A stretch of DNA of 64,000 bases from Haplodiscus bocki (lineage: Eukaryota). The number at the start of each line of letters is the position of its first letter. Position 1 is the stretch's first letter. Location of the stretch: contig OZ296648.1 of assembly GCA_965655095.1 (NCBI GenBank), positions 151,838,001 through 151,902,000 of the forward strand, in the 5' to 3' direction. The translations under genes and the position numbers were made by a program. Below, one piece after another: positions 10,590 through 43,809 of the stretch. A model generated the notes under the pieces. The model made no database searches. It was given only the letters and a program-made list of their open reading frames with translations, and had not been told where the DNA came from.

Positions 10590-10895
10590 CTTGGCTTTCA
10601 GAGCTCTATTCTCGTCATTATCATCCAGAATATAATCTTCGTCCACCCACTGACAATATTTCTGGTCCAATCCAGGAAAACTCACGTAATACTGAGGAAC
10701 TAATCGCCTTCTGGAGTTAGGGATGAAGCGAATTTTCTCGATGAGACACTCAAAAATAGCCAGTATTTTGCGCTTATCTGGCTCGTAACACAAAGCTATC
10801 TGGGCCACTTGGAATTTGGCCCTGGACGATGACGTAGACGCTGCTGTTTCAAGGTCAGAAGCAGCATTCTCAAGAGAATTTCTTCGTGATACCAT
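10590..10895 (-). CDS. MSL3: MSL3-like protein, exon 1 (chromo-barrel); alternative start at 10919
   Basis: ALCYEPDKRK..YYVSFPG..QWVDEDYILDDNDENRALK matches the MSL3 chromo-barrel; donor AAG|gttagt at 10590/10589, phase 0, in frame with exon 2. ATG 10895 (MVSRR) is preferred because a TTTCAG lies 5 nt upstream and it resembles the MVSTRG start of invertebrate MSL3. Confidence 0.8.
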
Positions 10896-11568
10896 TCGAC
10901 CTGAAATTTCGAAGTCCATGAAATTGGCGGACTTTAAAAGTTTCAGCTAGCTTCCTTTTGTAGATGCATGTTCGTAGAGTCCTTTTGTCAATCAGCTAAC
11001 AAGAATAACTTGATTTACAAACATTTTATTTGGAAGTCAATTGAAAATCAAGTTGAAATTGATCAATTAAAATCATCGTGAAAAAATTTAAAGGGAATTG
11101 TTGCTTGGGAAATATTAGCAGGATAAACACGTGGCCCTAAATATTCTAATGAGAGTTGCCGTTTCAGTGGAGTAGAGATAAACTTCGGCCATACGGGGAA
11201 TTTTTATTCAGAATTTAGACAATTCTACAAATTAGACATTTCAAAACTGATGCTGAGCAGAATTCACAGTGAACGGGATAATATTCTGTTGATGAACCGA
11301 AGAGTTAATTGCCTTGGAAAATAAATAGACTTCGATAAATTCAATGGTGGCCCCAGAAATGTTACGATTATTGGGGACATTCAGATATATATGTCTTTAT
11401 TGGCACCAAAAATAGCGATTCAACCTTCGAGAATGATTTCCGCATACTTGAGAGCTGAATTACGAATTTATGAAGAACTCATTGACTGTTTTTTTTTCGC
11501 AACAAGGCAAGCAAGTTGGATAAACGCCAAACTTTTGATGTTATTCATAATTCAAAACTGTAATAATA

Positions 11569-13461
11569 TCACTCCTGGTAGCCAGGTCTTCTTCGACAAT
11601 CGCCATTTTCGTATACATCTTCGGTTTGACTTGGCTCAGCGTGTGAAACCGATTCTCTGCCGTAAAAATGAGATTCTCTTTGATTTTCGGTGCTCTGTGA
11701 ACCATGTCTGTGAATACTTTTGTGGCCATTCGACCTCCTGGAGGAATTGTGTGTTGAAGGATGGTGGATGGATCCCACTGAAGAGAAAGCACTGACAAGA
11801 CTTCCTCCAAAGATGAACATCATCATCAAAAACAAAGACAATAAAATAAATCCATCTTCTGAATGGAGAAACCACGAAACCCATTCAGGAATAGAAGCAA
11901 TGGCATCAAACACAGTCTCATAAATCTCAGCGGCTTTTTCAAAATACGGATTTGGGGCGTGTTCGTTTTGAAGAGTGGTGAATTTGGAATTGGTGGAAAG
12001 GCGCGTTCTACTAGATGCAACGTTGATGAGAAAGCTTTCAACGTTCTCGTAACTTTTCGGATCATTCCAATTCTGCCATTTGTAGTAAACGTCTCTATCT
12101 CCGACTCTTAAAATTGTCAAAAGCTGCGCTTTTCCGGAATCAACAAACCCGAGATGCGATAAAAATTCGGACTGAGCGCTGACTGGAGATATGTATCCAA
12201 AAGAAGTTCTTTCCAAATATGGCAGTTGAGGTTCCTTCATTTTTGAAATTTGTTCGGCATACGAAGAGACTTCTTCGAAGACTGGATGGACAAGAATGGC
12301 GCAATACTTCCGATTACTTATTGACCTGACTGTTGGACAAAGATGATCAAAGATAACTTGATTAGACAAACGCGGGAATTCCACATGTTTGTATTTGTCC
12401 ACAAGCTGCGACGCTGTGCTATACGTCGGCGGCCGTAGCAGCATATCTTCGGGACCAGACTTTGAAGTAAACACAGAAAGATGTCCATTCAGACGCAAAT
12501 ATTCGTCTTTGTTTCCAGTGAACGAGCTTGATAAAATGTAAGCAAAGTTATGGGTTTGGTGGTTAGCAAACGACAATGTGTTAAACCATTTGGACACTTG
12601 TTTTTCCGTAACGAAGTACACAATCAAGGGTTTATTGTCGATAGCGATGTTTGATAGAACATTATTTAATTCACCTGTACTCTTCAATTCTTGTATCATG
12701 TGTTTAGGTACATGACTGAACATAAATTGTTCAATATTTGACAGAGACCATTCCTTCATATTATACAACCGGTGTTTGCCTTTTATGACAACCATAACTG
12801 AAGGTACTCTGGTGATTCCAAGTTTGTAAACCAAAGATCGGTCAACGTCTGCATCAGTTGTTGCGAACTTGACGCCCTTTTCCTTGTATGTTTTGTAAAG
12901 TTGGTCGAACATTTTTCGCACTATTTTACAGTTTCCACACCAATCTGAGTATGCAAAAATTAGATAAACATGTCTGTAACTTTCAGGGATGACTCCATTC
13001 TCGTAAACGTGTCTGTTTATAAGCAGCTCATCAGGTTCGGAGTCAAAAAACGAAGAGAAAGGACCTCCTCGGAACCCACCAGGGCCCCCACGTCCTTCGT
13101 TAGTTCGGAAAAACGAAAAAGGGAACGGGAATCCAAACCCGCCGCCTTCATGGCCTTGACGAGGTCTGTCATCAGTGGTGCCAAACCTGTCGTAATCTCG
13201 TCTTTTATCGTCATCAGTTAGAATTTCGTAAGCTTTGTTGATTTCAATAAACCTCGCCTCTGCGTCCGGACTTCTGTTTTTATCTGGGTGCCATTCCCTG
13301 GCTAATTTCTTGTACGCTTTCTTAATTTCCTGACCAGTAGCTTGACGACTCACCCCCAATACGTCATAAGGATTGAATGCTTCCAATAAAAGTACACACA
13401 ATGTCAAGATCATCAAAAAGTGAACATAGATTGTACAAAATCTGTACTGAGTCGCGGCCAT
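11569..13461 (-). CDS. DNAJC16: DnaJ homolog subfamily C member 16 (ERdj8)-like, single exon, 630 aa
   Basis: Signal peptide, J domain with HPD, thioredoxin domain [19 protein letters not shown] motif and C-terminal TM helix [16 protein letters not shown]. Confidence 0.9.
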
Positions 13462-16400
13462 GATAAACTGAAACAGATAACAAATTCGATTTTATGAAGG
13501 ATGACCATAGAGATATATTAAATTTACGCTAACCAGAAAATCTCAACAAGTAACACAAGCTGAGAACGGCCCGAGCCTGCGCATCCAATAAGGCTCAAAA
13601 GATTCGGAACTTATTCCTCTTCCCCCAACACATTGCCAAACTTTCATTCAAATTGATTTCTAATGGATAGTAACAATTTTTGGGTTTTTTCACATTTTTG
13701 AAGAAAAGTTGAATATTAGTGCCAAAAAGAATCCATTAAAAAGATAATTACATTCAAAATTTTAGAAAAATATTGTGCTGGGGGGGGGGGCGCAAAAAGA
13801 GCCAAATATTCTCAAGGGACCTTATGATGGCACATGAAGTGTTGCTTTTTCAGGAAATTTGCATCACTCTCATCTTTGCCCAAAAATTTTACAGATTGCT
13901 CACTTTGCGGCGCGTTATAATTGACGTTATAATTACATATTCAGCACAATTTTATGCTATTTACCATTGGTAAAAATTTCGGTATTCGGGATTTTTTGGT
14001 ATTCATTTTTTTTGAAAGATTTTGGGTGAAAATCAAATAAGAGGCATCATGAAAATGTTTGATATTTGCCTTTTCCGAAAATGTATTGTGGTATCAAGAA
14101 ATTTCCGGCTTTAGATGGTATGGTAGTTCATAGCATCAGCAGCAGCCCATTGCGTAACTTGGGCCATTCTGAAAATGGTGGGTCGTATTTCGAGTAGATT
14201 AAAGCTCCGATTAAAATGAGGTCAACATAAAGCCAGAACTTAAAACGACCCGCAGTGTTATTAAAATTATTAGAGCAGCCCCGGTAATTTGAACTGAGAG
14301 AGCATTCCCAGCATAACAATTTTTCTGTCTAACATGCTTTAATTGGCATGAAGTTGGTGATCATAAGTTTGAATCGATAAAGCTGAACTCACAGAGACGA
14401 AACGAACATATTCTGACTTGTCAGTAGAGACCAAAGATCATGCAGACATATGAAACCGAGATGTGATTGACACTTTTCGAAAAACTACAGTAGTGATTTC
14501 AATTAAATGAACTCCCAAGGAAAACTCCGCTTTTTTGAAGCTAGAAATCTGAGAGTAATGGGTTTAGAAATAAACTGTAGGAACAAAAGTCTCCTGGAAT
14601 TTTGATAACATTACAACGGTTTTTATTTCATCGAAATGGGACACGAAACGAAAATTTAAGAACCCCAAATTTTGGCATTTTTTGATATTTTTGCACTTTC
14701 TGAGTGGCTAAATGGACAAACAATTTCAACTTAATGCATCCAAAGGAACCTTTTGCAATCTTCCCAAAGTCATGATAAATAAACTTGACCCAAATTCTCT
14801 TGTCTTTGAAAAATCTCGTCCTTCCAAAGTAGTGATGTCTTATCATCCTTGCTTTGAAACTGCAAAATCTCAACCCTCGAAAAAGTTAGAAAAATACAGT
14901 ACGTACCGTTTTACAGCCTTGAATCATCTCTCCTAGATTTTTCAGATTTCTCAATTTCCTGAGACCTGAACTTTGAAAAAGATGAATCTTTTTTTTATAA
15001 CTGAAAGTATAGAAAACTCACTTCAACTAAGTAGTGTTAACTTTTAAGGACTTCATTTTCCAGAAAATTTCAAAAGGCAAAAGTTATGGGGGAGATTCAA
15101 CGCTGGAAAATTGTCATGGGACGCTTCTCTGTATCTTTTTACTTTTTCTTCTCTACTTTATAAGATATTCGCGGAAAACCTCAAATATGGTCAAAAAAGA
15201 CCTAATTTCGAAACAAAAACACTTATGAAAAATCCAAGAACCTTTGGCTTTTACCACTTCTTTGTAAAATCATTGCGCTTTCACAAAATAATTTCCAAAA
15301 TTACTCAATTTTTTCTCAGGGGTTTTTATTTGAATGAACCAGTACTGTACATCGGCTGTCATTTAAAAGTTTGTTCGAAAAAGTTATTGAGACAAGTACC
15401 TGTCACAGTGTCTCATACTCGAACATTTGATTTGTCAATCATATCTTCTTACGCCATTTTACAGCTCAAACTTTAAAAAAACTTGCAGATTTCACAACGG
15501 GAAACTGTACAGCTATCTCTCACACTATCTCAAATTCAAAAAAAATGATCCATCAAACATGACTTTTTGAGACGCTACTGTTCATTTTGAAACCCGTGCT
15601 TACCAAAACTAGCACTTTTTAGAACGCGAAAACAGAAAACTACGTACCGAATATCTGAAAAAGTGTCGTTTTTGACCGTTTACACCACACCGTTAGATGC
15701 TCTCCTGATGACGACAAAAATGCAATTTGTACACAGGATAAAGAGACTAACCCAGTTTCAATACACGTTCTTCCCTTCATCAGAAGAAACCAAAACTACA
15801 TAATTCAGGAAAAAAAATTATTTAGGAAAATTTTGCACGGACAAAGTTTCATAAATTTGCACAGCGAACATCAGGATGCTTTCATTTTTAGAGTCCCGTT
15901 ATTATCCTAGTATTTATTCATTCCATCCATTTCACCTTTTTACCATAAAGTTCAATAATTACGTGAATATTAGCCATATCGGAAAGAAAATTTTGGAGAT
16001 TCAACTCTCTGAAATGCAACACTTTTTGCAGAAATGATTCATTGAGGCATGAACGAGAAAAAGGTCAGTAAGATCAGAGTGAATTTTCACATTCAAAAAA
16101 TGTTGACGTTGGGAGTGAAGGTTTCTGCCAAGTAGTTTGCTAGCAAAAATTTTTTCGCAAAGAGTGTTAAAGTTGATGACCCTGGAAGAAACATGTATCT
16201 CAAAATTTTGGTATTCATTTCCCATTAGTTAATACTGTTTGAAAATATCTAAAGTTAATCATAAAAATTAACTGATTTGAAGAAAGGGGAAACATCGAGA
16301 TATTCACAGGAAAAGTAATGGAATTTTTGTTCCCGCAACGTTCTCCAAGTATTTTCCTACAATAAGGAAGTTACTTTTTTTCTGAAATTCTCAACGTTCC

Positions 16401-22250: not shown

Positions 22251-24266
22251 TTAATATCCATTCAGATCTTCATTTCTTAACCTTTCGTCCGCCAGAGACT
22301 TCCGCAAACTCTCCAACTCTGACAAATAATTACTTTCTTTCTCCTCAAATTCCTTTTTCTTCGCTACATGTGCCTCAGCAATCTTTTTCACCTTTTGTTT
22401 CATCAGACTTCTGTAATTGCGAATTTTTTGCTCGATTTCCATTTCGGACAATTGCTTCAAGTGCAAATCAGAAATCGTCTCATTTTTCTCATCAAGGAGT
22501 AACTTGATTTCGTGAGAATATGAATCGCGATCCTCTATTGCTTGTTCAGCTGCATCCAGGGCAGCCGATAACTGTTCACTCAACTTCTGTTCTTGTTCCT
22601 CAGCGTACAACAATTTTTTCTCCAAAAGAATCGCTTTTTCTTGCCACTTCCTCTGGGCCCGTACTATGGTTTCAACTCTTGAATGCATGTTATCCACTTC
22701 CTCGCGTCCAGACACCTTCTCTTCTTTTAGCCTTCGAGTTTCTAATTCAGATTTCTCAAGTTTTTCTAAAAGCACTTCGAAGTCAACCTTTGCTTGGTTT
22801 TTGAAATCGGTCAAATTTTTCTCGCTAGCTTCTAACGCCTCGTTGTGAGCTTTCAAAGCCACAAATTCAGTAGCACCTTCCGGTTCCAATCGCTTTTTGA
22901 GCACCAAAAACTTGTCACTCAATTCTTGGAACTCACATTCGTAGTAAGCTTTGTCAGCTTCGGCTGCCACTAATTTGCGAGTGAGTCGAGCAATTTCATG
23001 TTTATGAACCTCTAATTGCTGTTTCGATTTGTTTCTTTCCACATTTAATTGCTCAATTAGGATTTGATTTTCCTCTAAAACTAGTTTTGCCTGCTCTTTC
23101 ACGCGTTCCCATTCCCGGTCGTCGGTCGGCATCGAATTTGAAACATTCAGCAACTGGTTTTCTCGCAGAACTTCGTCCATGGAGTCTTTGAAATGCATCA
23201 CCCGGCGCTGCAGATCTCTCACTTCGACTTCTTTTTCATTCAGTCGGTCGTCAAAAGCCAATATTAAAGGGCTGAGGTACTGTGTACTTGTTAGCCAAGG
23301 TGGTTTGGCAACATTGAGAGGAATTCCGTTGTCATCGTTTGGCAAAGTTGTTCTGAACTTTTGCTGATAGCGGGCCAACTCTGTGTTGAGTCTTTCGATC
23401 ACTATTTTAAGATCTGAGTTCTCTTGGTCCAAAGAGCATCCATCTTTTCCACCTATTTTGGCCTTCCTTTTGTTCTTCGAATCCACCGAGTCACTCTGTC
23501 TGAGATCCACAATCGTTTTCTTGTACTCGTTTATTTCAGCCTGCAGATTCCCAATAACTGACTTCATATTCTGCATTGCGATTTCGCGTTCTCTCACTCT
23601 TGTTTGTAACTCTCCGTTCTTATGATGCAACACTTCCAGACGTTCCAAAACATTACGCAACTTGGCTTGCAATTCAGTATTGGTAGCTCCTACGCTATCT
23701 TTTTCCATTTTCTCCACGTAACCTAAGCCCCCGGGGTAACTCGGACTCATTAGCTTCTTCTCTTCAGAACAGACAGCAGAAGATTCGCGACTTTTCTTCA
23801 AACTGATTTGACTGATACGAGCATAATTTGACATTTGACTCTCATCCGCATTTTCCAAACTCAAAGGCACTGATGATGACGCAAGTAGATGACTGTTTTG
23901 CTCCTCAGCTTCGACTACAGATTCCAACACGCTCACTTCCTTGCCATCCGCGACGTCTGAAAGTATTGAATTTTCAACTTCTTCATACCCTTCACATCTA
24001 GACAAGGTTGAAAGTCTTGCATTTCCCCTTTCAGGAAGCTTCACGGTCTGGGTATTCATCCTTTCTGCTTGCCGACGTTGATCAGTTTCAAAGTCACCAG
24101 CCAAGAAGGAGCCAGTGACAAAGGAGCCTGCGTTAATTATAGCCAAGTGTATGGGGTTCCCATTTGTTTCTGTGTGTGGTAAATTGGGAGTTGCTGTGAA
24201 AATAAGTCTAGGCATCAGGGCATTGATGAAACGGAGATTTTCCGATGAGTTCTTCTTCTTTCCCAT
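22251..24266 (-). CDS. CEP89: Centrosomal protein of 89 kDa (CCDC123)-like, single coding exon, 671 aa
   Basis: PPWLTSTQYLSPLILAFDDRLNEKE and KEQAKLVLEENQILIEQL are CEP89 signature blocks within a long coiled coil. Start placed at ATG 24266 (MGKKK), 6 nt after a TTTTCAG; the upstream ORF extension reads like non-coding sequence. Confidence 0.85.
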   Translation of the reverse strand: MGKKKNSSENLRFINALMPRLIFTATPNLPHTETNGNPIHLAIINAGSFVTGSFLAGDFETDQRRQAERMNTQTVKLPERGNARLSTLSRCEGYEEVENSILSDVADGKEVSVLESVVEAEEQNSHLLASSSVPLSLENADESQMSNYARISQISLKKSRESSAVCSEEKKLMSPSYPGGLGYVEKMEKDSVGATNTELQAKLRNVLERLEVLHHKNGELQTRVREREIAMQNMKSVIGNLQAEINEYKKTIVDLRQSDSVDSKNKRKAKIGGKDGCSLDQENSDLKIVIERLNTELARYQQKFRTTLPNDDNGIPLNVAKPPWLTSTQYLSPLILAFDDRLNEKEVEVRDLQRRVMHFKDSMDEVLRENQLLNVSNSMPTDDREWERVKEQAKLVLEENQILIEQLNVERNKSKQQLEVHKHEIARLTRKLVAAEADKAYYECEFQELSDKFLVLKKRLEPEGATEFVALKAHNEALEASEKNLTDFKNQAKVDFEVLLEKLEKSELETRRLKEEKVSGREEVDNMHSRVETIVRAQRKWQEKAILLEKKLLYAEEQEQKLSEQLSAALDAAEQAIEDRDSYSHEIKLLLDEKNETISDLHLKQLSEMEIEQKIRNYRSLMKQKVKKIAEAHVAKKKEFEEKESNYLSELESLRKSLADERLRNEDLNGY

Positions 24267-24810
24267 ATTGATCTGAAAAAAAATCGTAGACATATAATTT
24301 TGAAAGTTTAAAGGACAGTTGTATTTTTTTGAAAGAGAGCCTGAGTGCAATTTGGCACTAAGTAAATTCCGTTGAAAATCAAAGCAGAAAGAAAAAGGCA
24401 ACATTGAAATCTCTGGAAAAACTACCAAATTTGGCAAGTGCCAGATTGAACAGTTGCCTTCTGGAGTATAGCTGGTAATTATATAACTAATTCGAAATGG
24501 CTAGCTGAGCTAAGTATACATGTAATTTTGAATGACACTGTAAGCCGAACATTTTGTTCACATAAATGAAACAGTAAAATAGTATCATTAAATAAAAACC
24601 AACGATTTAGACATTTTTCAATTTCTTATTCGAGAAATATTTCACAAAAAATGATTGCATAAAAATGAAATGACAAATTCTAAATTATGGAATCATTGCG
24701 CAAACAAGAACTCCAAAAAACCGAAAAAAAGGCATCACATCTATCAGATCAGGCAATTCATCTCTCCAAATCCAAAATCCGCAGCCGAAAAAAAAACACT
24801 TTTCCCATAT

Positions 24811-27633
24811 TCAAGATGCACCTGCAACTTCCAGAAGTTGCTGGCTGGGGGCTGATTTATTAGCAATACATTTATAAAAATCAGCCACTGATAAACATTT
24901 TGTTTCAGACTTCACTGAACAGCTCTCACTTTCGGCGAAAATGTAAAACTGAGCATTGCAAATTTCAGCTTCAGAAGCGTCTGTCAAGTTACCATCATAT
25001 GCAATGATGTACCTTTCAAGAGCACATGAGACGTCTTTTGAAAGGTGAGGCGATAACGCAAAACAACAACCTGACAAGAAACTGGGCAATGTCACACCAT
25101 TTTTTTGACTGTTATTGCTGACATTATTAATTTCAATTGAGCTAGTTGAAGGCTCATCATCAGCAATGCCGTAGTCTGCGACAACTTTTCTGCTTTGAAT
25201 CTGTGTAGAATAAGTGTGATTTTGCCTCGAATGATAGTAGACAAGTGTTTTAACATTTTTGGATATGAAATGCTTCTTCAAAAGTCTTTCCGCACAATAC
25301 CAGTTGAAGGTCTTCATGGAATGCCCCAAACGAGGGGAGTGAATAACAGAGGTATACCCGGCGGCCCTCTGCTTCTTGCAGAACTGGGCAATTACCTCAA
25401 AAGCAGAGTCCAGAACTGTAACATCTATATCTCCAATAACCCCTTTGTTTGACCGTTTCTGTGCTACAATCAGGGCAACGTATCTTCCTACTTTATCACC
25501 TGACTGTGTGTCGTCTTCTTTGATGGGCACAACATGCACATCTCCAAATGTCAGGTCTTTCATGTCGGATGCCAGCTTATACCTCAATGACACGTCAGCA
25601 GACAATTTATTCAAAGCAGAGAATACTCCACCTTCGCCCCACTGACCAGTATTGTCCACACAATGAATAATTATAGCTTGCTCTTGATTTCCATGAGAAA
25701 TAGGTTTAGTAACATCTCCTGCAACGTAGTTGAGAGTCAAACACTCGCCATCTTCTTCCTGTGACGTCATCAAATCAGGCTCTTCATTTGACGCAAAGAG
25801 ACTAGTTGAGTCGCCCATAATTAGTTTCAAGCTTTCGTACTCGTTTTCTGCCCATAGTTTTTCCAGGCGTAACCTTCGAGCTTCTTGGCGCTTCAGAGCA
25901 TTTTCAGCATCTAGTTTTGCTTTCTTGGCAAGAATTTCATCAATTTCTTCTTGAGAAGTGATTCTTTTGCTAGTTTTTACTCTAGGTCCCAGCACCTGGT
26001 TAGAATTGGATTGAGATTCAACCACTTTCTGTTCCTGCACTTCTTCGACTAACTTCTGCACTGCCTTATCAGAAAGCTTCATTCTATTTTTATAGTTTTC
26101 GCCTTCAAAGTCATACATATCTTGCGCTGAAGCGACTCCGTTTTTACTATTTTTGACAGCAGAAGTTTCATTCATTTTTACCGTCTTCACGGCCCATTCC
26201 CCACTTTCATCTGTGGCGCCCAAAACATCTTCTAAAACCACGTCCAGATCATCAGTATTGTCTACGTCACTCAAAATCTTCTCCAGCCCAAACTTGACAG
26301 CTTCACCCATTTTTTCAACATCAGCGTTCGCAGCAGTATATGAGGGATTGTCTTCAAGACCTCGCAAATCCCCGGTATCCAAGATGCTGCACGAAAGTTG
26401 TAGCTTCTTCGTAGCCCGATCAATAATGATTTCCTCAATTGAATCTTTACAAACTAATCGAATAATTTTGACTGGCTTGGTTTGACCAATTCTGTGAGAT
26501 CTCGCTGCTGCCTGAATGTCATTTTGAGGGTTGAAATCACAGTCCATGAAAATTACAGTATCCGCACTGGTTAAAGTGATTCCTTGACCTCCTGCTTTGG
26601 TACTCAGCAGAAAAACGAAAGTTGATTCTTTAGAGTTGAAGTTTTTGATAGATAGAAATCGCTCTTGGCTTCGACATGAGCCGTCAAGGCGTTCGTAAGC
26701 GAAACATCTGTACTCTAAGTAGTCCTGCATTATGTCCAACATAGATGTGAATTGTGAAAATACCAAAACTTTGTGCTTTTTTTCCTTGAGGAAATCCAAC
26801 ATTTGGTCCAGAAGCGTCAATTTCTGGCTAGTATGGATCAAATGGTCACCAGCCTGGAATGGTTCCGGTTCTATACCCTGGAATAAATAAGGATGCAAAC
26901 AGCACTTTCTGAGTTGGCATAAGATATTATTCAGAGATGACTTTTTTGGCATCCCTTGCGAAGCCAAGGTACTTAGAAGTTCCGAATCCTTCAACAATAT
27001 CGTCTTGTATAACTTTTTCTGAAGAGCCGTCAAACCATGGAAGATAATAAGTTCAGATTTTGGCGGTAAATTAATATTAACATCTTTTTTTGTTCTTCGC
27101 AACACATAGTTTTTCAAAATTTTTGTGAGTCCTTCAGTTGGCGTGCCATTTCTTTCAGCTGAATGCTTCGCAACGAACGATTCCAAGTTTTTCAAGGGGA
27201 AACTTCTATTGTCTACCAGAGCAAGAAGACTATACAATTCACGCAGGTTATTTTGAATAGGAGTTCCCGTCATCAACACTATATGAGCAAATGTGAGATC
27301 CTTTATCAAAATTTCATACAGCATACTCTCAGAGTTCTTCACACGATGCGCTTCGTCTATCACGATGACATCCCAGCTGAAATCTGCAAACTCTACATCG
27401 TTCAAGACAGTCTCATAATTAGATGCCACTAAGCGTGAAGCTGAGGTGACACGTTTCAGAGAATTGTAAAGACGGGTGCGCTCATCTTTTGATCCCCGAA
27501 GAATCGTCACACAGTCAGAGAAAACTTCAATCAATTTTGTCTCCGATGACCATGTATCCAAAACTGACAAGGGACAAAGTATGAGAACATTAATCCTTTT
27601 CTTCTCCAACAATTTTTCCAGAAATGATAGGAC
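24811..27633 (-). CDS. CHD1L: CHD1L/ALC1 chromatin remodeller, exon 2 (SNF2 ATPase remainder, macro domain, BRCT-like tail)
   Basis: Acceptor ttttcttgacag|GTC at 27633; DEAH, TGTPIQNNL, LLSTKAGGQG and QAAARSHRIGQ motifs; macro domain YVAGDVT..HCVDNTGQWGEGGVFSAL..WYCAERLL. Confidence 0.93.
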   Translation of the reverse strand, partial: VLSFLEKLLEKKRINVLILCPLSVLDTWSSETKLIEVFSDCVTILRGSKDERTRLYNSLKRVTSASRLVASNYETVLNDVEFADFSWDVIVIDEAHRVKNSESMLYEILIKDLTFAHIVLMTGTPIQNNLRELYSLLALVDNRSFPLKNLESFVAKHSAERNGTPTEGLTKILKNYVLRRTKKDVNINLPPKSELIIFHGLTALQKKLYKTILLKDSELLSTLASQGMPKKSSLNNILCQLRKCCLHPYLFQGIEPEPFQAGDHLIHTSQKLTLLDQMLDFLKEKKHKVLVFSQFTSMLDIMQDYLEYRCFAYERLDGSCRSQERFLSIKNFNSKESTFVFLLSTKAGGQGITLTSADTVIFMDCDFNPQNDIQAAARSHRIGQTKPVKIIRLVCKDSIEEIIIDRATKKLQLSCSILDTGDLRGLEDNPSYTAANADVEKMGEAVKFGLEKILSDVDNTDDLDVVLEDVLGATDESGEWAVKTVKMNETSAVKNSKNGVASAQDMYDFEGENYKNRMKLSDKAVQKLVEEVQEQKVVESQSNSNQVLGPRVKTSKRITSQEEIDEILAKKAKLDAENALKRQEARRLRLEKLWAENEYESLKLIMGDSTSLFASNEEPDLMTSQEEDGECLTLNYVAGDVTKPISHGNQEQAIIIHCVDNTGQWGEGGVFSALNKLSADVSLRYKLASDMKDLTFGDVHVVPIKEDDTQSGDKVGRYVALIVAQKRSNKGVIGDIDVTVLDSAFEVIAQFCKKQRAAGYTSVIHSPRLGHSMKTFNWYCAERLLKKHFISKNVKTLVYYHSRQNHTYSTQIQSRKVVADYGIADDEPSTSSIEINNVSNNSQKNGVTLPSFLSGCCFALSPHLSKDVSCALERYIIAYDGNLTDASEAEICNAQFYIFAESESCSVKSETKCLSVADFYKCIANKSAPSQQLLEVAGAS

Positions 27634-30121: not shown

Positions 30122-30332
30122 ACAAGACGCCCGGCTACCACCAGCATATTTTCTGCCTTACCATTTTGGTAAATACGCCTCTTTAAAATATTAAAGCGTT
30201 TTTTTTTTTTCAAAAAACTCTGCTTCTTGATCATATTTTCCATGTTTTCCACCTTTGAAAAATTTCCGATTTCCAGCCAAAAAACCTCACAATTAAGGTG
30301 GAAAAGACATCTTTAGGAAAAAAACATCATTT
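30122..30332 (-). mobile_element. Helitron-like non-autonomous element, left part, interrupted by the LTR element (continues 42196-42478)
   Basis: acaagacgcccggctaccaccagc is the reverse complement of a hairpin + CTTG|T end like those at 21691-21714 and 61302. Confidence 0.5.
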
Positions 30333-30757: not shown

Positions 30758-30899
30758 CTACCCACAAAAAGTGGAGCTACGGTGAGAAAAAAGGAATGAG
30801 GAGAGAAGGAAGATCCAGAATCCAGAGCGTGAAACAAGTGAATGATGAACCAAATGAACACTGGGGGAGACCACACAGGAGTCCAGAAAACGAATTACA

Positions 30900-35987: not shown

Positions 35988-38900
35988 CTAGGAATGCGGG
36001 AAGATGGGGGAACAAGAGAAGTTCCCAGTTGTGAAGAGGGGTTTGACAAGGTACCAAAGGAACAAAAGAATCCGACAAAACCGAAGGATCAGAAGAGGAA
36101 GAAGTACAGGGATAGAGACACGGTTACGTGCTCGTTCCACAAAGGATTCAGAAAATCCTGAAAAGGTGGATGATGAAGATCCCCATTGAGACGGAGGGTA
36201 AATTTGAGGAGTATAAATGAAAATCGACGTAGAATGACAACTAGGTGTCGTCGCAACAGTATAAATAAGCGTTGAGGGTGTGTGGGCTGCAGCGACAGTC
36301 AATACGTTGGAAGAATCAAATGAGGCTTCTGAAAGTCTACGGCCTGCTGAATCGTCCGTTAAAAAGCGTACATTCGTCAAAGATAGGGGTGAAGACTCGG
36401 TGTCAGAAAACGTGTCAGGAGGTGAAAGAGGGTCAGAATCAAATGCAGCTAAAATTGGGGCAACTGATTGTGGGGTAACCTGAGCACGAGGTGGGGATGG
36501 CGCTACTAAGCGAAGTGCCATGCGGAGTGGCACGTAGCGCAAAAGAACATTAGGTTGATTAGATGGTTCAACTTCAGGGGAAAAAGTTGTATCAGTGAGA
36601 AGATCAGGTAAAGCATGGTCAAAAACGGCGAGTTCAGAACAATTTCTGGTAATAGGGTCAGGTTGAAAAACCAGAGGGTTAAAGCCAGAAAAGTCTTCCA
36701 CTGAGTATTGGGGTGTGATAGGCCGTAACCTAATGCAATGGGATACTGAGCGAAGAGTGTGCCAACTTCACGAATAATATAATTCGAATTTGTTAGGACT
36801 TGTCCAATACGGTAGTGGCAACCATTTAGTCAGGGATTCACCCATATGTTCATTGACATTCGATAGTTTCGGATTCAGGAGTATTTAAAAACAGTGCTTT
36901 TTGAGAGTAAGAGCTATCCCGTCATGAGACTGTCGTTATTAGCTGTACACGGAAACCGTGGTATCTCATGAATACTTCATTCATGCGATCTTGTAAAGAA
37001 CTAATGAATTCATATCGCGTTTGTAAGTTTTGTTTCATTTTCTCGTGGAAACGAAGATCTAAGGGAGTAATTGGTAGTCGACCAGGGAAGACAAAAATAG
37101 CAGTACACCCTATAGAAGTTAGTAGGAAGTTTTGTTCAGAAAAACTGCAAAATCGACATAGTTATGCCAATCGCGTTTCATATGATTCTCGTAGATACCA
37201 AGATACTGTTTGAGAGACGCCTGAGTGCGCTCACATAACCTATTAGTCTCTGGGTGCTTGACAGTGGCATAATCAATGTCAACTTCAAGAATTTCACAAA
37301 GACGAGCAGTAAAAGCGGTGCCCATATCCGAAAGAAAGATCTTATGCATACGGGACGTTCGAATGAAAACCTGGAAAAGCTGCTTAGCGCCATTGGAAGC
37401 ACCGGCGTTGCGCACGGGAACGGTGAGAACGTACTTCGAAAAGACATCTTTTGCGGTTAAAATCAAGGTGAAACCTGCCGATTCTGGTAACCTGCCAACT
37501 AAATCGATTTGAAGCATGTCACCAAAGAAATGCTTATCCGTGGCGAGAGAAAGAAACGGGGGTTTGGGTGTTCCATGTTTCACCGGTTTCATTTGCAAGT
37601 CTGAATGGCGGTTTTTGATGTAATTCGTAAGGTATTCAACAAAATTCAAGAAGTAGAAACGTTGTCTAAACAGTTCCGCTGTTTTGGCAATACCATTTTG
37701 ACCGGCATAAGTACTGTTGTGTACCCGATAAAGGAGTTCTTGTCGCATGTGGGCTGGGACCACATTTTGCCGTGTAACATTGCCCCCTGTATGGTCAAAA
37801 AAATCCGATAGAGCACTCCATGGTGACATTCAAGACGTGTAAAATGTTCAAGAAATTTGAAAAATTCGCTATTCCAATGAGCCGAAGAAGGAGGTAGTAC
37901 TTTTTCTATCCACTCAGTGAATTGCATAATATTCAGATCTTTCTGCTGTTCAATCTGCCATTGGATCGCAGTCAGGCAGTCCGTTGATTTTATGACTATC
38001 CAATGGGTTAGGAACATGCAGTGCATTCAAAGAGTACAATACTCGCAAGTTCATGATGTCAATAGGACTTCAGTCATGACGCATGTCATTAATGGAGTCT
38101 TCGGAGACTTGTATTCTCATTCGTAAGGACACATCACGCGTGGGAAGTTTCGAGTTATTGCGCTATTCAAGCTTGTGTGCGGATGTATATGTTGCGTGAC
38201 AAGTAGTCAGCGGCGGCAACTCCTTTGCCTTGAATGTGAAGGAGGACAAAGTTGAAAATCAAGACATGATCGACACATGTCCAAAAACTAAAAGGAATCC
38301 TTTCAGTTAAGACAAGTACTGGCTTTGAGCTTCCCCATAGAACATGGGGGTAAATATCAAAAGCGAAATGTAAGGCCAAAAACTCTTTGAAGTATAATGA
38401 CAGTTTCCAGTAAATTGTGAAGATTAGAAGCTTCTATGCATCTATGATGTTCATCCGTAAGTTGCAATTCGGCATTGTTTCGAAGGAGTTGCGAAGAAGG
38501 TAGGAGTTTTCCTCCTATTTTCGGGATGAAGGAAGGTACTGGAAAAATCCGACGAAGCGTCGAATCTGCTTCGGGCTTTTTGGAACTTCAAGAGTCTAAA
38601 GGAAATGAGAAACTTTCGTTTTATTCCGAGACATGCTTTCGGTAGTAATTGCAAAACCGAGGAATGTCATTTTGCCTTCAATCCAAATTCACATTTCGAA
38701 GGTGTCAATTTAAGTCATGAATCATTCAATTTTTCAAGGCATGTAAAAACTGCTTTAAGGTTGTCAAAAAACTTCAAACGTAGCGGCGGCAGCACTTAAA
38801 TCATCTACATACTGGTCTGCAACTATGCAAGGATATATTTACTTTTAAAGAAAAGCTGAAAACACAGAACGGCTAAAACACTACGCGAGACGTAAGTACG

Positions 38901-40360
38901 CAAACGTTCCTGAAAGCAAGTAAAAAAATTTGGACAGAAGGAGAGTCAGCCAACTGAAGCACACGATGGGCTTGACTAGAGTCTAGTTTAGCGAAGAACT
39001 TTTTCCCAGCAAGATGTGCGTTAACATAAGCTAAGGTAGCGATAGGAAATTTATGATTGTCGTAAACGAGGCGAATAAGTAGTGAATTCGTCGAAGATCA
39101 ACTGAAAGACGTAATTTTCCAGAGGGTTTATGGACGGCAAAAATGGGACTCCAGTATTTCGAGTAGGTGAGAGTGGTGATAATTCCCCAGTATTGCAAAA
39201 GTGCAAGTTCAACAAGAATTTCATCACGATAATGTATTGGTGTCGGTGGACCTTGTGTATACATTGCGTCCGAGTTTTCCGGAGTGATTTGCACCTTGAC
39301 ATGTTTGTTCGCACCTATGTCAAGGGGATGACGCGCAACAATATGGTAAAATCTTATAAAAAAGGTCTTCCACGGTTCAATTCTATGTAACATTGAAGAC
39401 AGAATTCTCCAAGGAAATTGTTTCAGGAATTGTTGTCTATCTTCTTCAGATTTTAGGGGATTCAATGTTTCTTGTGACTTGAGTTTAGAAAGTTCACCGT
39501 AGATCCTATGATTAATTTCTGTAACGAGTTCAGGAGTTTTACAATTTTCCGGCGTACGAAACCAAAGAATCGTTACCCGGATAGACCTTGGTTTCCGAAT
39601 CAGCTATTAAATAATTCAGTTGTTCATTAAAGGATCTAGTCTAGAGTGCAGGATTCACTGGTTGTAGGTACGTAGCTAGTTTCGGTGTAAGGATCGCTAT
39701 TCGAGCGGCTTGAGAGTTTCTGGATTAAGTGATGTTATGTGGCATAACGTTCAAAACACCTAGCGAACTTTTGTCTTCGTCTCATTTTACAAAAGCCCTT
39801 GTGATACAGAGACCTGTATCTTTTTCAAATTCAGGGCTCTGTTGTACTAAAGCAACTGTACGTTCAGGGAAGGTACTGTGCTGCAAACAGTAAGAAAAAA
39901 CTGAAGAACTCGGTTTTATGGTCAGAGAAAGATTAGAATAAAAAAGAGGTTCTTTCTCGAACTAAGCCAACTAATTTTTCTATCACAGTGTAGACGCTCA
40001 AATATTTGTAGAGTTAGATTAGGCAACTTAAGAGTAAGTGTTTTCGGGTGAACAGCAATGTCGTTATGTTCAAAAAATGGCAGACCTAAAATGGTCTGAT
40101 TCACAGTCTTAAGAATGAAAAATTCTCAGTAAAAGTTTCATTAGCTATAGAAAATCGCGAAGAGTTTCAGAGGTGGGGACAGCAGCATCATTGCCTACTT
40201 TGAAACTGCTCTGTTGGGCACAAAATTGAGATATAGCAGAAGGATACAGGCGTTTGGGTTTCTGAAAATTTTTTTAAGGCATGGCGCTGGAAAAGGCACC
40301 AGTATCTACAAGAGCCTTTATTGGAAACGAAAAAGTTATCGCTATACAGAAACGAAAACT
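35988..40360 (-). pseudogene. pol: Gypsy pol (protease, RT, RNase H, integrase, long S/P/T-rich C-terminal tail), multiply disrupted
   Basis: RALVDTGAFSSA (protease); WSPIFAVHKPSGKLRLSVDLRRI (RT); AADYLSR (RNase H end); LQIDLVG..SDMGTAFT..HPETNRLCER (integrase); IRLRP running into ORF 35988..36701. Confidence 0.9.
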
Positions 40361-40449
40361 ACGGGGCTTGTTAATTACTACCATAATAGGAGATAAAGGA
40401 GAAAGCGACAAGGGGCAGTGTGTAGCTCAAGTAATATTTTCGGTTCTGG

Positions 40450-41621
40450 TTCATCTGTTGTTGATTTTACATCGGTTGTGGCATCATCTGTTGATGCGGC
40501 AACATCTGAAATTGTGATTGATTGTAAGGTGAAACATCTTGATAGGGTAAAGGTGGAACTGCGCGGTACGTCTGACTAAACCAACAATTAGCGGGTATAA
40601 GACCAAAATTGTTGCAAATATTGCAATGACTACGAACCGATTGTGCGCGGTACTGATTCTGGTTATTGTTTCGGAAATTGGAGTTTCGGGGCGCCAATTC
40701 TGTTGATTATTTTGTGAAATTTGCTGAAAATGTCGGCAGCGCTGATGATGGTTTCCACGTGGATCAAAACTGCGAGGACCAATGTTGATTCTGTTGAAAT
40801 TATTATTTCCATTGTTGTTATTGTTTTTGCGTCTCTGCTGGCTATCATTTTGATTATTGGGTCGATTGTTGTTTCCAAGCTGGTTGATGGAAGATTCTGA
40901 GAGGGTTTTGCTGATTTTCTCTAGTTCATCCGTAATCTTTGACATTCCTTGTTGGAACTTGTTTTGGGCTTTCGTCAATTCTTCGATTCCGGCGAAGAAA
41001 ATTTTTCATGACTCATCTGGAATTTCATTAAATGCTGTGTCATCATCTTCAAGACAGAGCCGAGCTACTATCATTTGACTAGCTGCTTTGGCACAAAAGT
41101 CATCTATTGTTGAATTTTTGCGTTGTCAGGAGAAATCGATTAAGTTTCAATGGCATTCCGTTGATGAATGCTTCTCGAATTCGGCGGTTTCTTTCTTGTT
41201 CTCTGTTTTCTGCAAGCAGGGCTGGGCGACCTCCTGCAGCTTCTAGTGCCTTTATATTTGAGTATGCTTCCAGCGCCAGGCGTTGCAAGTCTGTAAAAAA
41301 ATCCTGAGCACTTTCATCTGAGGCTTTAATCTTTCTGGACTGGAAGAGTAGTTTCTGCAAGTGCACACGCTGATCATCTCTGTAGCGCTCTCGGAGAGCT
41401 GTTATTGCATTGGCGTAATCGGTGCGGGTAGTTTCTGGTAGTTGGTCCAAATATGTCACTGCACCTCCTTTGAGGTGAAGATGTAGATATGTATGGCGGT
41501 CTGCATCAGCAATTCCAGCAACATCAATGCAACTATTGAGTTGTCGTATGACTTCTTCAAAATTTTCTTTTTCAGTGCCTTTACAAGGCTGTAAAATCAC
41601 AAATGGTTGTATGGCGGCCAT
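40450..41621 (-). pseudogene. gag: Gypsy gag with Asn/Gln-rich region and decayed CCHC knuckle
   Basis: ORF 41100..41621 (LHLHLKGGAVTYL..ESAQDFFTDLQRLALEAY..IREAFING) and CNICNNFGLIPANC near 40620. Confidence 0.85.
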
Positions 41622-41734
41622 AACTTCAAATGAAGTAGAAAAGTGAAAGTAAAGATGAAGAAATTTGTTTTAGAATTGCGTGGCTGTGAGAATGGCGAGT
41701 GTTCGTGGTTTCCGATGTTCAGGAGTTAACAAGA

Positions 41735-41750
41735 GAAAGGACTCCTGCCA
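41735..41750 (-). promoter_or_regulatory. Putative primer-binding site
   Basis: TGGCAGGAGTCC.. begins 3 nt inside the 5' LTR end; cognate tRNA not identified. Confidence 0.5.
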
Positions 41751-41753
41751 TCA

Positions 41754-42190
41754 TGTGATGTCATGGCTCGCAGCGGTGGCAAAGCAGAATTTTATACAAT
41801 TCAGTAGTCATTTGTGGTGCTTTCAGTTTGAAAATTATGGTTTGAATTTAGATGCAATCGTTGATTACAACAGTTTTCCCTAGAAAGTTAACTCGAAGAA
41901 AATAGATTGTTGGAGACAGAAATAGTTCTACAAAATAAAAGCGAAAAGGTTGCTGAACATATCTCAATTAATGAAGGCATAAGTAAAATGCACTAGAAGT
42001 ACCACTAGACTGGTTACTAAGTTAGTTATGCGGCTTGTGTGGTCTCAGAAAGGTTGTTTTAAAATCTTTGATTCTTTGGTGATCTGGCTTCCTCTCATTG
42101 GCCCGTGACTGTGATTGGTCCACGTCTTCTTCGGAATAGGTCGTTCATCTGTTGCTGCTTCTTTGACATATCTTGGTGAATATCATGACA
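41754..42190 (-). repeat. 5' LTR
   Basis: Homologous to 30333-30757, visibly diverged (roughly 15% by eye), so an old insertion. Confidence 0.9.
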
Positions 42191-43547
42191 CATTCGATAC
42201 GCATTCTACAAAAAATTTGCTGCATTTAGCGATTTTGGATAAATTCAAGGTTTTATTCTCGAAGAAACCCTTCTATTTTTCCAAAAACCCAAATTTCGTT
42301 TGTTTTGAGAAATCATTTCACGGCAAATTTTATACAATTTGGTGGGAAAAAATTTCACGTTCAGAAACGAACGAACATCGTTTAACAACGCAATTGGCAA
42401 ACATCGGGTGAAAAATCGTTCCATTTAAGAGGAAGATTTTCCTTCCATATTTTATAAATATGGGGAAAATAATATTGTTTTGGAGAGAGCGAGAACAGAT
42501 ATTACGAAGAGTTCAGAATGTCACACCTTCAATTCTCTCCAATTGGGATCGGCTATAAAGCCAGAGACAATTATGGAAAAAGACTGACCGCCAGGCGAAA
42601 GTACATTTATGAGGGGAGACTGGATGACGGCTGGGAAAACGGAAGAGAAAGCCACGGAGGAAGCAAAAGCCATATTTCAGTATAGGGCGCTTTGGATGCA
42701 GGCTGACTGACGACGATCCGCTCTGAGATTTTAAAAACTTGCTTTGGACGAGTTTGTGCATAAGGAGCTGCGAGTGGAGGCGGCTCAGAGTACTTTTGCA
42801 ATAATATTGCTTGGCATTCGTGCCCCTCTCATTTGCATCTTTCTTCTGTTGCGTTCGCCCTTTTCTAGAAGCCCACCACCGATTCAAAAAGGTATCAGTC
42901 TCAGATTCCTACTATTAGCGCTAAAAAGCGAAAGTTTTCAATTAACGAAAGGTACCGACAGTTATCAATGACAAACTTAGCAACAAATATTTAAGCAATT
43001 CACGGCTTTTGGAAAGTCCATGAAAATGTTCTACCTCTCCTTTCAAAGTTGGCCGGAGCATATTGCTGCTAGTACTCGATATCTGCCTAAATCCGAAAGC
43101 AAAGTTTTTAGGCATGCAATTTAAACGCCACTGATGATAGTCTTAGCTTGAATACATACACCATTGAGAAATTGGATCTTTTTGTTTTTTCAATTACCTT
43201 TTTTAATGAATTTTTTTGAAAGCTCAATTTATTTGCAATTTTGAACACTTTGGCAAGTTTTGAGACCAGATTGTTGAAATTTAACGCACACGTGAGTCTT
43301 TATATCGCAAAAACAATCCGCATATAACCGATTTCCCCGGATCGGTCTTAATATTCGTCTAGTTCCATAGAAACTTTCAATACAAACGGAAAAAAACGCA
43401 ACAAAAATGTTGACAATTCTTCAACTTCGCATTACAATAAGTTCCAGACATATGTGAAAAACGGTTCAAGCATTTAGGTAATAATAATGAAACCAATAGC
43501 CTTCAATAATTCACAGAAACATGCAACTTATGAAAAGTTATTATTAC

Positions 43548-43664
43548 CTGGAAGGTTTTTCCAAGTCCCATTTCATCCGCCAAAATAGATCCATGGCCTT
43601 CTCCGAAATTCGAAAGAAGCCAACTGACACCTTTCTTTTGATAATCTTTCAATTGTCTCGCCAT
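43548..43664 (-). CDS. CHD1L: CHD1L exon 1 (39 aa; Q motif and Walker A), missed by the ORF track
   Basis: MARQLKDYQKKGVSWLLSNFGEGHGSILADEMGLGKTFQ, then donor gtaata; in-frame stop upstream of the ATG. Spliced protein is 979 aa. Confidence 0.92.
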
Positions 43665-43809
43665 TAAATAAAGGAAAATCTACATCGTTCGTCACATTTT
43701 TCAACTCTGAAAACTAAACTACATCACAATAAAATTCAACCTTCCGTAACACTACATCACAAACAGACAGATGGTGATCCCACTCACCTTTCGGTCTAGT
43801 CTAGACAAT

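What the first reader, a model, noticed from the sequence alone, without database searches (positions are those of the whole stretch)
10895..43712. TTTCAG acceptor just upstream of the start codon of all four host genes: candidate SL trans-splicing
Seen on the minus strand: TTTCAG then ATG after 5 nt (MSL3, 10906-10901), 6 nt (DNAJC16, 13473-13468), 6 nt (CEP89, 24278-24273) and 42 nt (CHD1L, 43712-43707). The piggyBac ORF has the same arrangement (6 nt, 7188-7183). Known: an unpaired UUUCAG close to the AUG is the hallmark of spliced-leader trans-splicing, as in nematodes. Inference: these genes are trans-spliced. Ordinary 5'-UTR introns are the alternative explanation.
Basis: partly seen in the sequence, partly recalled or inferred. 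Interest (0 to 1): 0.7.

Follow-up and report, generated by a model that had tools for sequence, protein, structure and literature searches.

The report
Spliced-leader acceptors before acoel start codons

Summary
All five TTTCAG..ATG arrangements are at the stated coordinates. They are not chance: only 1.6% of minus-strand ATGs have a TTTCAG 0-10 nt upstream. The window is a contig of an unnamed acoel (ENA metagenome assembly). The closest named relative is Convolutriloba macropyga.

SL trans-splicing is already published for Acoela (2008, 2022).

- **DNAJC16:** an orthologous mRNA contig carries the full published acoel leader, then 7 nt, then the ATG.
- **CEP89:** two transcript contigs of a closer relative are identical downstream and diverge exactly at the AG. 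One reads TTTCAG (unspliced); the other reads TAAATAG, the leader's 3' end.
- **MSL3:** no transcript was found. The acceptor-ATG arrangement is conserved in two other acoel genomes, and no donor-like site scores above 5.1 bits within 1 kb upstream.
- **CHD1L:** this case differs. The best splice donor of the whole strand (AAG|GTGAGT) lies 81 nt upstream, so an ordinary 5'-UTR intron is more likely.
- **piggyBac:** the ATG opens only 34 codons in a decayed element and is unsupported.

No transcripts or SL RNA gene of this organism itself could be reached.

Verdict: observation confirmed; interpretation supported for two to three genes. It is a new instance of a known system, of low to moderate interest.

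The parts
13468..13473 (-). TTTCAG acceptor 6 nt upstream of the DNAJC16 start codon; best-supported SL trans-splice site
   Evidence: The identical TTTCAGtttatcATGGCC is found in the related species. C. macropyga has TTTCAG + 6 nt + ATG. The orthologous mRNA L002 carries the full SL, then 7 nt, then ATG.
11569..13461 (-). DNAJC16 coding region, one uninterrupted ORF of 630 codons (stop included in the range)
   Evidence: An in-frame stop lies 11 codons upstream with no ATG in between.
24273..24278 (-). TTTCAG acceptor 6 nt upstream of the CEP89 start codon; supported SL trans-splice site
   Evidence: Conserved in both haplotype contigs of the related species. Logan transcripts of a relative read L004 TTTCAG|GTCAAAATG (unspliced) and L005 TAAATAG|GTCAAAATG. 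No donor-like site lies in the intergenic 540 nt.
22251..24266 (-). CEP89 coding region, single ORF of 671 codons
   Evidence: Orthologues are 655-670 aa and carry Pfam PF28159 (CEP89).
10901..10906 (-). TTTCAG acceptor 5 nt upstream of the MSL3 start codon; probable SL trans-splice site
   Evidence: The related species has TTTCAGatcgaATGGTATC. C. macropyga has AATTCAG + 8 nt + ATG. Within 1 kb upstream the best donor-like site scores only 5.1 bits.
10590..10895 (-). MSL3 exon 1 (102 codons, chromo-barrel), ending at donor AAG|GTTAGT
   Evidence: It is 78% identical to the related species over 114 aa.
9705..10215 (-). MSL3 exon 2 (start of the MRG domain) after acceptor TCCAG. The 3' limit is approximate and later exons are unresolved.
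11005..11128 (-). Single-copy conserved block between DNAJC16 and MSL3, ending in AATAAA (11030-11025), 129 nt upstream of the MSL3 acceptor. Possibly the end of the DNAJC16 3' UTR.
   Evidence: It is 83% identical over 118 nt to the related species while the flanks are diverged. The link to the 3' UTR is inferred and weak.
43707..43712 (-). TTTCAG acceptor 42 nt upstream of the CHD1L start codon; more likely the 3' end of an 81-nt cis intron
   Evidence: The related species has a TTTCAG 46 nt before its ATG, inside a ~60-nt tandem duplication.
43782..43787 (-). GTGAGT donor (context AAG|GTGAGT), the top-scoring donor-like site of the whole minus strand
   Evidence: It scores 11.9 bits (100th percentile of 3561 GT sites) and is the only AGGTRAGT on the strand.
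43548..43664 (-). CHD1L exon 1 coding part (39 codons, MARQLKDYQ...GLGKTFQ), ending at donor CAG|GTAATA
   Evidence: The exon-1 orthologue in L118 carries Pfam SNF2-rel_dom.
24811..27633 (-). CHD1L exon 2 (SNF2, Helicase_C, BRCT-like) after acceptor TTGACAG. The 15.9-kb intron (27634-43547) holds a BEL/Pao-like LTR retroelement.
43692..43697 (-). AUG-UGA mini-uORF in the CHD1L 5' leader. A second one, AUG-UAG, lies at 43685-43680.
   Evidence: An AUG-UGA is also present in the related species at L118 6496-6501.
7183..7188 (-). TTTCAG 6 nt upstream of an ATG (7176) near a decayed piggyBac-like element; role unsupported
   Evidence: The ORF is 34 codons. The DDE pieces (5550-6113 and 5000-5284) are in different frames about 1 kb downstream.

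Best explanation
The window is from an acoel flatworm. The TTTCAG motifs 5-6 nt upstream of the start codons of DNAJC16, CEP89 and (probably) MSL3 are 3' splice sites for spliced-leader trans-splicing.

Each gene is transcribed with an upstream outron. The spliceosome joins the leader of a small SL RNA to the base after the AG and discards the outron. That leader is 38 nt, GCTTTTAGCCTAATTGTTGTGATAAACTTATTAAATAG, in the acoels whose transcripts could be read. The mature mRNA then begins with the leader, followed by 5-6 nt and the AUG.

The CHD1L TTTCAG is more likely the acceptor of an ordinary 81-nt 5'-UTR intron whose donor is AAG|GTGAGT. Whether its upstream exon also receives the leader is unknown.

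Shown: the motifs, their non-random placement, their conservation, and SL-bearing orthologous transcripts for two genes. Inferred: that the same happens in this organism, that its SL is the same, and the MSL3 case.
For: Organism: the best named relative of DNAJC16 is Convolutriloba macropyga at 55%. The contig comes from ENA assembly ERZ26859043.

Published SL trans-splicing in acoels: S. roscoffensis, SL GCCTAATTGTTGTGATAAACTTATTAAATAGA, 30.2% of genes (PMC9911081). Convoluta pulchra (PMC2481426).

DNAJC16: the orthologous mRNA contig L002 starts with a template-switch-oligo remnant, then the exact SL, then AGGGAAA, then ATG.

CEP89: orthologous transcripts L004 and L005 are identical downstream and diverge exactly at the AG. 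L004 reads ...TTTCAG and L005 reads TAAATAG, the SL 3' end. The chance of matching the 5 informative bases is about 1e-3.

Conservation of acceptor + 5-8 nt + ATG: in the related species for all three genes, and in C. macropyga.

General rule in acoel SL-mRNAs: 95 contigs carry the SL at their 5' end. The main ATG lies within 10 nt in 42 of 93 and at 5-6 nt in 18 of 93.

SL RNA genes with SL|GTAAGT, a stem-loop fold and a linked 5S gene were found in metagenome contigs.

No consensus donor lies upstream of the MSL3 and CEP89 acceptors.
Against: No transcript of the window's own organism was available, and no SL RNA gene or SL copy lies in the window or in the related-species loci.

L005 shows only 7 nt of leader. 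L002 comes from the other acoel clade, about 51% identical in DNAJC16.

A moderate donor-like site, CTG|GTTAGC (7.8 bits), lies 65 nt upstream of the DNAJC16 acceptor, although it is not conserved in the related species.

MSL3 has no transcript evidence at all.

In S. roscoffensis only about 30% of genes are trans-spliced, so the prior for any one gene is modest.
Confidence: 0.72

Rival explanations
1. All of these TTTCAGs are acceptors of ordinary cis-spliced 5'-UTR introns. Each gene has its own promoter and a non-coding first exon further upstream.
For: For CHD1L this is the better reading. AAG|GTGAGT, the best donor on the strand, lies 81 nt upstream of the AG, with a plausible 59-nt exon before it. 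DNAJC16 has a moderate donor-like site 65 nt upstream. About 70% of genes in S. roscoffensis are not SL trans-spliced.
Against: The orthologous DNAJC16 and CEP89 transcripts carry the SL, not gene-specific exons, at the homologous junction. No donor-like site of 5 bits or more lies in the CHD1L-CEP89 intergenic region, and the only one within 1 kb upstream of MSL3 scores 5.1 bits, 546 nt away. The DNAJC16 donor-like site is absent in the related species, while the acceptor is conserved.
Confidence: 0.2
2. The same-strand gene pairs CHD1L-CEP89 and DNAJC16-MSL3 are polycistronic operons. The acceptor before the downstream gene serves to cut the polycistron, as in nematodes, tunicates and chaetognaths.
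For: The pairs are on the same strand with short spacers: 540 nt from the CHD1L stop to the CEP89 acceptor, and 670 nt from the DNAJC16 stop to the MSL3 acceptor. An AATAAA at the end of a conserved block lies 129 nt before the MSL3 acceptor. In the related species, AATAAA lies 174-220 nt before the CEP89 acceptor. The four genes are collinear and co-oriented in the window, the related species and C. macropyga.
Against: No polycistronic transcript was seen. Spacers in C. macropyga are 3.5-9 kb and CEP89-DNAJC16 is 8.8 kb in the window. The window has no AATAAA between CHD1L and CEP89. The conserved block could equally be an MSL3 promoter, and its resemblance to a DNAJC16 3' UTR is weak. Operons have not been reported for acoels (the table in PMC2481426 gives '?').
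Confidence: 0.15
3. The TTTCAG-ATG proximity is a coincidence of AT-rich sequence or a translation-context motif, with no splicing involved.
For: TTTCAG is common, at 57 occurrences per strand. The piggyBac-like case may well be chance.
Against: Only 1.6% of ATGs have this arrangement. The motif and its spacing are conserved while the flanks diverge. The transcripts L004 and L005 differ exactly at the AG.
Confidence: 0.03

Closest known systems
SL trans-splicing of the acoel Symsagittifera roscoffensis (Martinez et al. 2022, PMC9911081); first noted in Convoluta pulchra ESTs (Marletaz et al. 2008, PMC2481426)
   Same: Same phylum. The DNAJC16 orthologue's mRNA carries exactly the published leader. 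The CEP89 orthologue of a closer relative shows the leader's last 7 nt. The SL RNA genes found here have SL|GTAAGT and a stem-loop fold, as that paper describes.
   Different: The window's organism is an unnamed acoel from a different clade, about 50-55% identical in DNAJC16 to C. macropyga and to the leader-bearing orthologue. Its own SL and transcripts were not seen. The papers give no acceptor motif, no SL-to-AUG distance and no statement on operons. Contig 5' ends and the gene L061 suggest a leader 6-7 nt longer at its 5' end (GCTTTTA...) than the published 32 nt.
Nematode SL1 trans-splicing
   Same: A UUUCAG acceptor close to the AUG, an outron without a donor, very short 5' UTRs, and SL RNA genes linked to 5S rRNA genes (for L061). 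The nematode features are from general knowledge.
   Different: The leader sequence, length (38 nt against 22 nt) and lineage are unrelated. No Rfam SL family matches the acoel SL RNA. No SL2-type leader or operon has been shown.
Ordinary cis-spliced 5'-UTR intron
   Same: For CHD1L: a consensus donor AAG|GTGAGT, 81 nt, then a TTTCAG acceptor, all upstream of the ATG.
   Different: For MSL3 and CEP89 no comparable donor exists within reach. For DNAJC16 there is only a moderate, non-conserved one.

Membership tests
Spliced-leader trans-splicing | A common leader that is not encoded upstream of the genes is found at the 5' end of many unrelated mRNAs | not testable with these tools
   Met in related acoels: 95 metatranscriptome contigs begin with the same leader. 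No transcript data of the window's organism could be reached.
Spliced-leader trans-splicing | The leader is joined exactly at the AG of the candidate acceptor (orthologous transcripts) | tested here: met
   DNAJC16: L002 has the SL, then 7 nt, then ATG. CEP89: L005 TAAATAG|GTCAAAATG against unspliced L004 TTTCAG|GTCAAAATG. Both are orthologues in other acoel species. For MSL3 and CHD1L no transcripts were found.
Spliced-leader trans-splicing | An SL RNA gene: leader + GT donor + Sm-like site + stem-loops | tested here: inconclusive
   Found in metagenome contigs L048, L061 and L034: SL|GTAAGT, fold z = -3.7, and a 5S gene 177 nt downstream in L061. None lies in the window or in the related-species loci. 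The rest of this organism's assembly is not searchable by DNA.
Spliced-leader trans-splicing | The acceptor is unpaired: no cis donor upstream in the same transcript | tested here: inconclusive
   MSL3 and CEP89: no good donor-like site (best 5.1 bits for MSL3; none of 5 bits or more in the CEP89 spacer). DNAJC16: one moderate site, 7.8 bits, 65 nt upstream, not conserved. CHD1L: not met, as the best donor of the strand lies 81 nt upstream. Sequence alone cannot prove the absence of a donor.
SL-resolved operon | A polycistronic precursor, with the downstream gene's trans-splice site a short distance after the upstream gene's poly(A) site | tested here: inconclusive
   The neighbours are on the same strand. 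AATAAA lies 129 nt before the MSL3 acceptor in the window and 174-292 nt before the acceptors in the related species. The window has no AATAAA between CHD1L and CEP89. C. macropyga spacers are 3.5-9 kb. No polycistronic read was available.
cis-spliced 5'-UTR intron | A consensus donor and acceptor pair upstream of the start codon | tested here: met
   CHD1L only: AAG|GTGAGT (GT at 43787), then TTTCAG ending at 43707, 81 nt in all. Not met for MSL3 or CEP89.

The most novel reading that the evidence does not exclude
The four genes CHD1L-CEP89-DNAJC16-MSL3 are collinear and co-oriented in three acoel genomes that are only 33-55% identical at the protein level. They may be held together because they form SL-resolved polycistronic units, with at least the pairs CHD1L-CEP89 and DNAJC16-MSL3 acting as operons. 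These would be the first operons described in Xenacoelomorpha.
Probability: 0.15. Interest if true: 0.55.

Novelty: new member of a known kind. Interest (0 to 1): 0.28.

Why it matters
The finding shows that SL trans-splice sites can be read from raw genomic sequence in an uncharacterised acoel, as an acceptor 5-8 nt before a conserved start codon with no donor upstream. It also shows that the same genes are trans-spliced at the same position in distant acoel clades.

In practice this helps gene annotation. Prokaryote-style or naive callers extend these ORFs upstream through the acceptor: the window's own DNAJC16 and MSL3 were called 67 and 8 residues too long.

It adds little conceptually, because SL trans-splicing in acoels has been known since 2008. 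The open points it makes testable are whether acoels have operons and how widely the leader is conserved within Acoela.

Tried and rejected
- **SL in the window.** I searched for the published SL, and for shorter parts of it, in the window and the related-species loci with mismatches and indels. Nothing was found. A 16-nt match to the SL/donor junction in L117 is antisense to a reverse-transcriptase ORF and is chance.
- **RNA genes in the window.** Rfam and tRNA scans found nothing.
- **MSL3 orthologous transcripts.** The representative-library search returned only the window's own exon ORF and distant MSL3/MRG proteins at 26-41% identity. None of the 110 SL-bearing loci encodes MSL3 or CHD1L.
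- **CHD1L orthologous transcripts.** The word-index search returned only genomic exon ORFs for acoels.
- **CHD1L exon 1 of the related species.** It was absent from 6.8 and 10 kb of upstream flank. It was found only after walking a further 10 kb.
- **The conserved DNAJC16-MSL3 block.** Comparison with the 3' UTR of the orthologous mRNA gave only a faint resemblance, not usable as proof.
- **Pfam on other ORFs.** Twenty further window ORFs and the pieces upstream of the piggyBac DDE domain gave no hits.
- **Sample identity.** A literature search for the run and assembly accessions found nothing.
- **Rejected ideas.** The window is not nematode. The piggyBac ATG is not a validated start.
- **Operators' rules.** No contig was taken for human, and no N stretch was met.
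Full report
**Observation**

Reading the minus strand confirms every coordinate:

| Gene | TTTCAG | Gap | ATG |
|---|---|---|---|
| MSL3 | 10906-10901 | 5 nt | 10895 |
| DNAJC16 | 13473-13468 | 6 nt | 13461 |
| CEP89 | 24278-24273 | 6 nt | 24266 |
| CHD1L | 43712-43707 | 42 nt | 43664 |
| piggyBac-like | 7188-7183 | 6 nt | 7176 |

- The window has no N.
- Pfam confirms MSL3 (chromo-like, MRG), DNAJC16 (DnaJ, thioredoxin), CHD1L (SNF2, Helicase_C) and a piggyBac DDE fragment. CEP89 is confirmed by homologues carrying PF28159.
- Twenty further ORFs have no Pfam hit, so these four are the only recognisable host genes.
- TTTCAG occurs 57 times on the minus strand. Only 18 of 1134 ATGs (1.6%) have one ending 0-10 nt upstream, so three verified start codons with a 5-6 nt gap are far beyond chance.
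- The start codons are real. In a related species the same ATG is preceded by in-frame stops without another ATG, and the N-terminal residues are conserved.

**Whose genome**

- DNAJC16 is 55% identical to the protein of the acoel Convolutriloba macropyga. The other close hits are unnamed ENA, JGI and Logan sequences.
- The window lies on contig ctg86637 of ENA assembly ERZ26859043.
- Pairwise identities define two acoel clades. One holds the window, a 79% relative ('sp2', ENA ERZ25074608, two haplotype-like contigs) and a Logan transcriptome species. The other holds C. macropyga and a JGI metatranscriptome species.

**What is known**

SL trans-splicing was noted in ESTs of the acoel Convoluta pulchra in 2008, with operons marked '?' (PMC2481426). 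It was described for Symsagittifera roscoffensis in 2022: leader GCCTAATTGTTGTGATAAACTTATTAAATAGA, 30.2% of genes trans-spliced (PMC9911081).

**Direct evidence from orthologous transcripts**

- *DNAJC16.* L002 is a 2433-nt JGI contig encoding the DNAJC16 orthologue. It begins with ACATGGGG, which I read as a template-switch-oligo remnant (inference). Then come GCTTTTA, the exact published leader up to AAATAG, AGGGAAA, and the ATG. The homologous mRNA in another acoel therefore carries the leader 7 nt before its AUG, against 6 nt between the AG and the ATG in the window.
- *CEP89.* Two Logan contigs of a species 72% identical to the window's protein are identical from GTCAAAATGGGC onward and differ upstream. 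L004 continues as genomic-type sequence ...AAACATTTCAG. L005 starts TAAATAG, the last 7 nt of the leader. The divergence falls exactly at the acceptor. Five informative bases match the leader, a chance of about 1e-3.

**Conservation**

- sp2 has TTTCAGtttatcATG (DNAJC16), TTTCAGatcaaaATG (CEP89) and TTTCAGatcgaATG (MSL3), while the sequence upstream diverges.
- C. macropyga has TTTCAG + 6 nt (DNAJC16), TTTTTAAG + 7 nt (CEP89) and AATTCAG + 8 nt (MSL3).

**General rule**

- A scan of JGI metagenome contigs with the leader's last 22 nt gave 110 loci.
- In 95 of them the leader sits at the contig's 5' end. The main ORF's ATG follows within 10 nt in 42 of 93, and at 5-6 nt in 18 of 93. The median gap is 14 nt. 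The window's spacing is therefore the modal one.
- Three loci are SL RNA genes: leader|GTAAGT, a stem that pairs the leader's 3' part, a U-rich single-stranded stretch and a terminal hairpin (z = -3.7). L061 also has a 5S rRNA gene 177 nt downstream.

**Paired or unpaired acceptors**

A simple donor weight matrix, with frequencies from general knowledge, scored all 3561 GT sites on the strand.

- The two cis donors inferred from exon-intron structure and reading frame score 6.9 bits (CHD1L exon 1, CAG|GTAATA) and 10.2 bits (MSL3 exon 1, AAG|GTTAGT).
- Upstream of the MSL3 acceptor nothing exceeds 5.1 bits within 1 kb.
- Upstream of CEP89 nothing of 5 bits or more lies in the intergenic 540 nt.
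- DNAJC16 has one moderate site, CTG|GTTAGC (7.8 bits, 65 nt upstream), which is not present in sp2.
- CHD1L is different. AAG|GTGAGT (11.9 bits) is the best site on the strand and the only AGGTRAGT. It lies 81 nt upstream of the AG, with a pyrimidine-rich CACAG ending at 43847 that could start a 59-nt exon.
- I therefore read the CHD1L TTTCAG as the end of an ordinary 5'-UTR intron.
- In sp2 the CHD1L TTTCAG lies 46 nt before the ATG, within a ~60-nt tandem duplication. An AUG-UGA mini-uORF is present in the 5' leader of both species. This suggests the stretch is part of the mature 5' UTR but does not decide between cis and trans.

**The piggyBac-like case**

The ATG at 7176 opens 34 codons. 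The DDE domain survives as two pieces in different frames (5550-6113 and 5000-5284), about 1 kb downstream and behind many stops. The intervening pieces have no family match. Nothing ties this ATG to the transposase.

**Mechanism and confidence**

- The most likely picture: DNAJC16, CEP89 and probably MSL3 are transcribed with outrons. They receive the acoel leader at the TTTCAG, giving mRNAs with leader + 5-6 nt + AUG.
- This is shown for orthologues and inferred for this organism.
- My confidence is about 0.8 for DNAJC16 and CEP89, about 0.65 for MSL3, and about 0.3 for a leader joined directly at the CHD1L TTTCAG.

**Operon reading**

- The four genes are collinear and co-oriented in the window, sp2 and C. 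macropyga.
- Spacers are 540 and 670 nt for two pairs in the window.
- A single-copy conserved block ending in AATAAA lies 129 nt before the MSL3 acceptor.
- Against this: spacers reach 3.5-9 kb in C. macropyga, no polycistronic transcript was seen, and the block's link to the DNAJC16 3' UTR is weak. I keep this reading as a low-probability novel case.

**Verdict**

Noticed in passing
L022, L030, L040, L063, L078, L081, L083, L093 (JGI/NCBI metagenome contigs; SL copy positions): Genomic contigs hold a 5'-truncated copy of the acoel leader inside the contig. It is followed directly by TTTCAG (or TTTCA/CTTCAG), a few nt, and the ATG of an ORF1-like protein (coiled-coil, Cys-rich or chromo-like). 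An ORF with APE endonuclease and reverse transcriptase follows. These look like LINE retrotransposons copied from SL-trans-spliced mRNAs that keep an acceptor next to the relict leader. I found no report of this in the searched literature.
   Followed up: partly
L061 524-632 and 738-856; L048; L034: These are acoel SL RNA genes: leader|GTAAGT, a predicted three-part fold, and in L061 a 5S rRNA gene 177 nt downstream. No Rfam family matches the SL RNA. Contig 5' ends and L061 suggest the full leader is 38 nt, starting GCTTTTA, which is 6-7 nt longer than the published 32-nt sequence. The base after ...AAATAG is A in 69 of 95 transcripts, which may explain the published terminal A.
   Followed up: partly
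window 9562-43712; L006/L117/L003; L121/L122 (C. macropyga OZ077299.1, 356-389 kb): The gene order CHD1L-CEP89-DNAJC16-MSL3, all on one strand, is kept in three acoel genomes, although CEP89 is only 33% identical between the clades. From general knowledge, the four genes are on different chromosomes in human.
   Followed up: partly
window 43697-43692 and 43685-43680; L118 6496-6501: Two AUG-stop mini-uORFs (AUG-UGA and AUG-UAG) lie in the CHD1L 5' leader. An AUG-UGA is also present in the leader of the related species.
   Followed up: partly
window 3210-3509 and 7681-7980 (wider: about 3140-4223 and 7635-8694): A 98% identical direct repeat, 4471 nt apart, brackets the decayed piggyBac-like region. 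The ORFs 3355-3684 and 7826-8155 are identical. Its nature (tandem duplication or another element) was not determined. It may also truncate the 3' part of MSL3, whose later MRG exons I could not find.
   Followed up: no
window about 30000-42000, minus strand (Pfam hits at 41100-41621 and 37119-37829): A BEL/Pao-like LTR retroelement (DUF1759 gag-like, integrase) with many broken ORFs fills the 15.9-kb CHD1L intron in the gene's own orientation. G+C skew is strongly positive across it. I described it only and did not reconstruct it.
   Followed up: no
L003 3726-10000 and L117 17625-18860, against window 11569-13461: In the related species DNAJC16 is interrupted after the J domain by 6.3 kb in one haplotype contig and about 1.2 kb in the other. 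The window's gene is one uninterrupted ORF at that point. This is either intron gain or loss, or an insertion of varying size.
   Followed up: no
window 47314-52619, plus strand: A run of six ORFs of 127-319 codons in shifting frames has no Pfam match. It may be a decayed element or an unknown gene.
   Followed up: no
window 43824-43811, minus strand: A run of 14 G lies in the putative non-coding first exon of CHD1L, about 25 nt before the GTGAGT donor.
   Followed up: no
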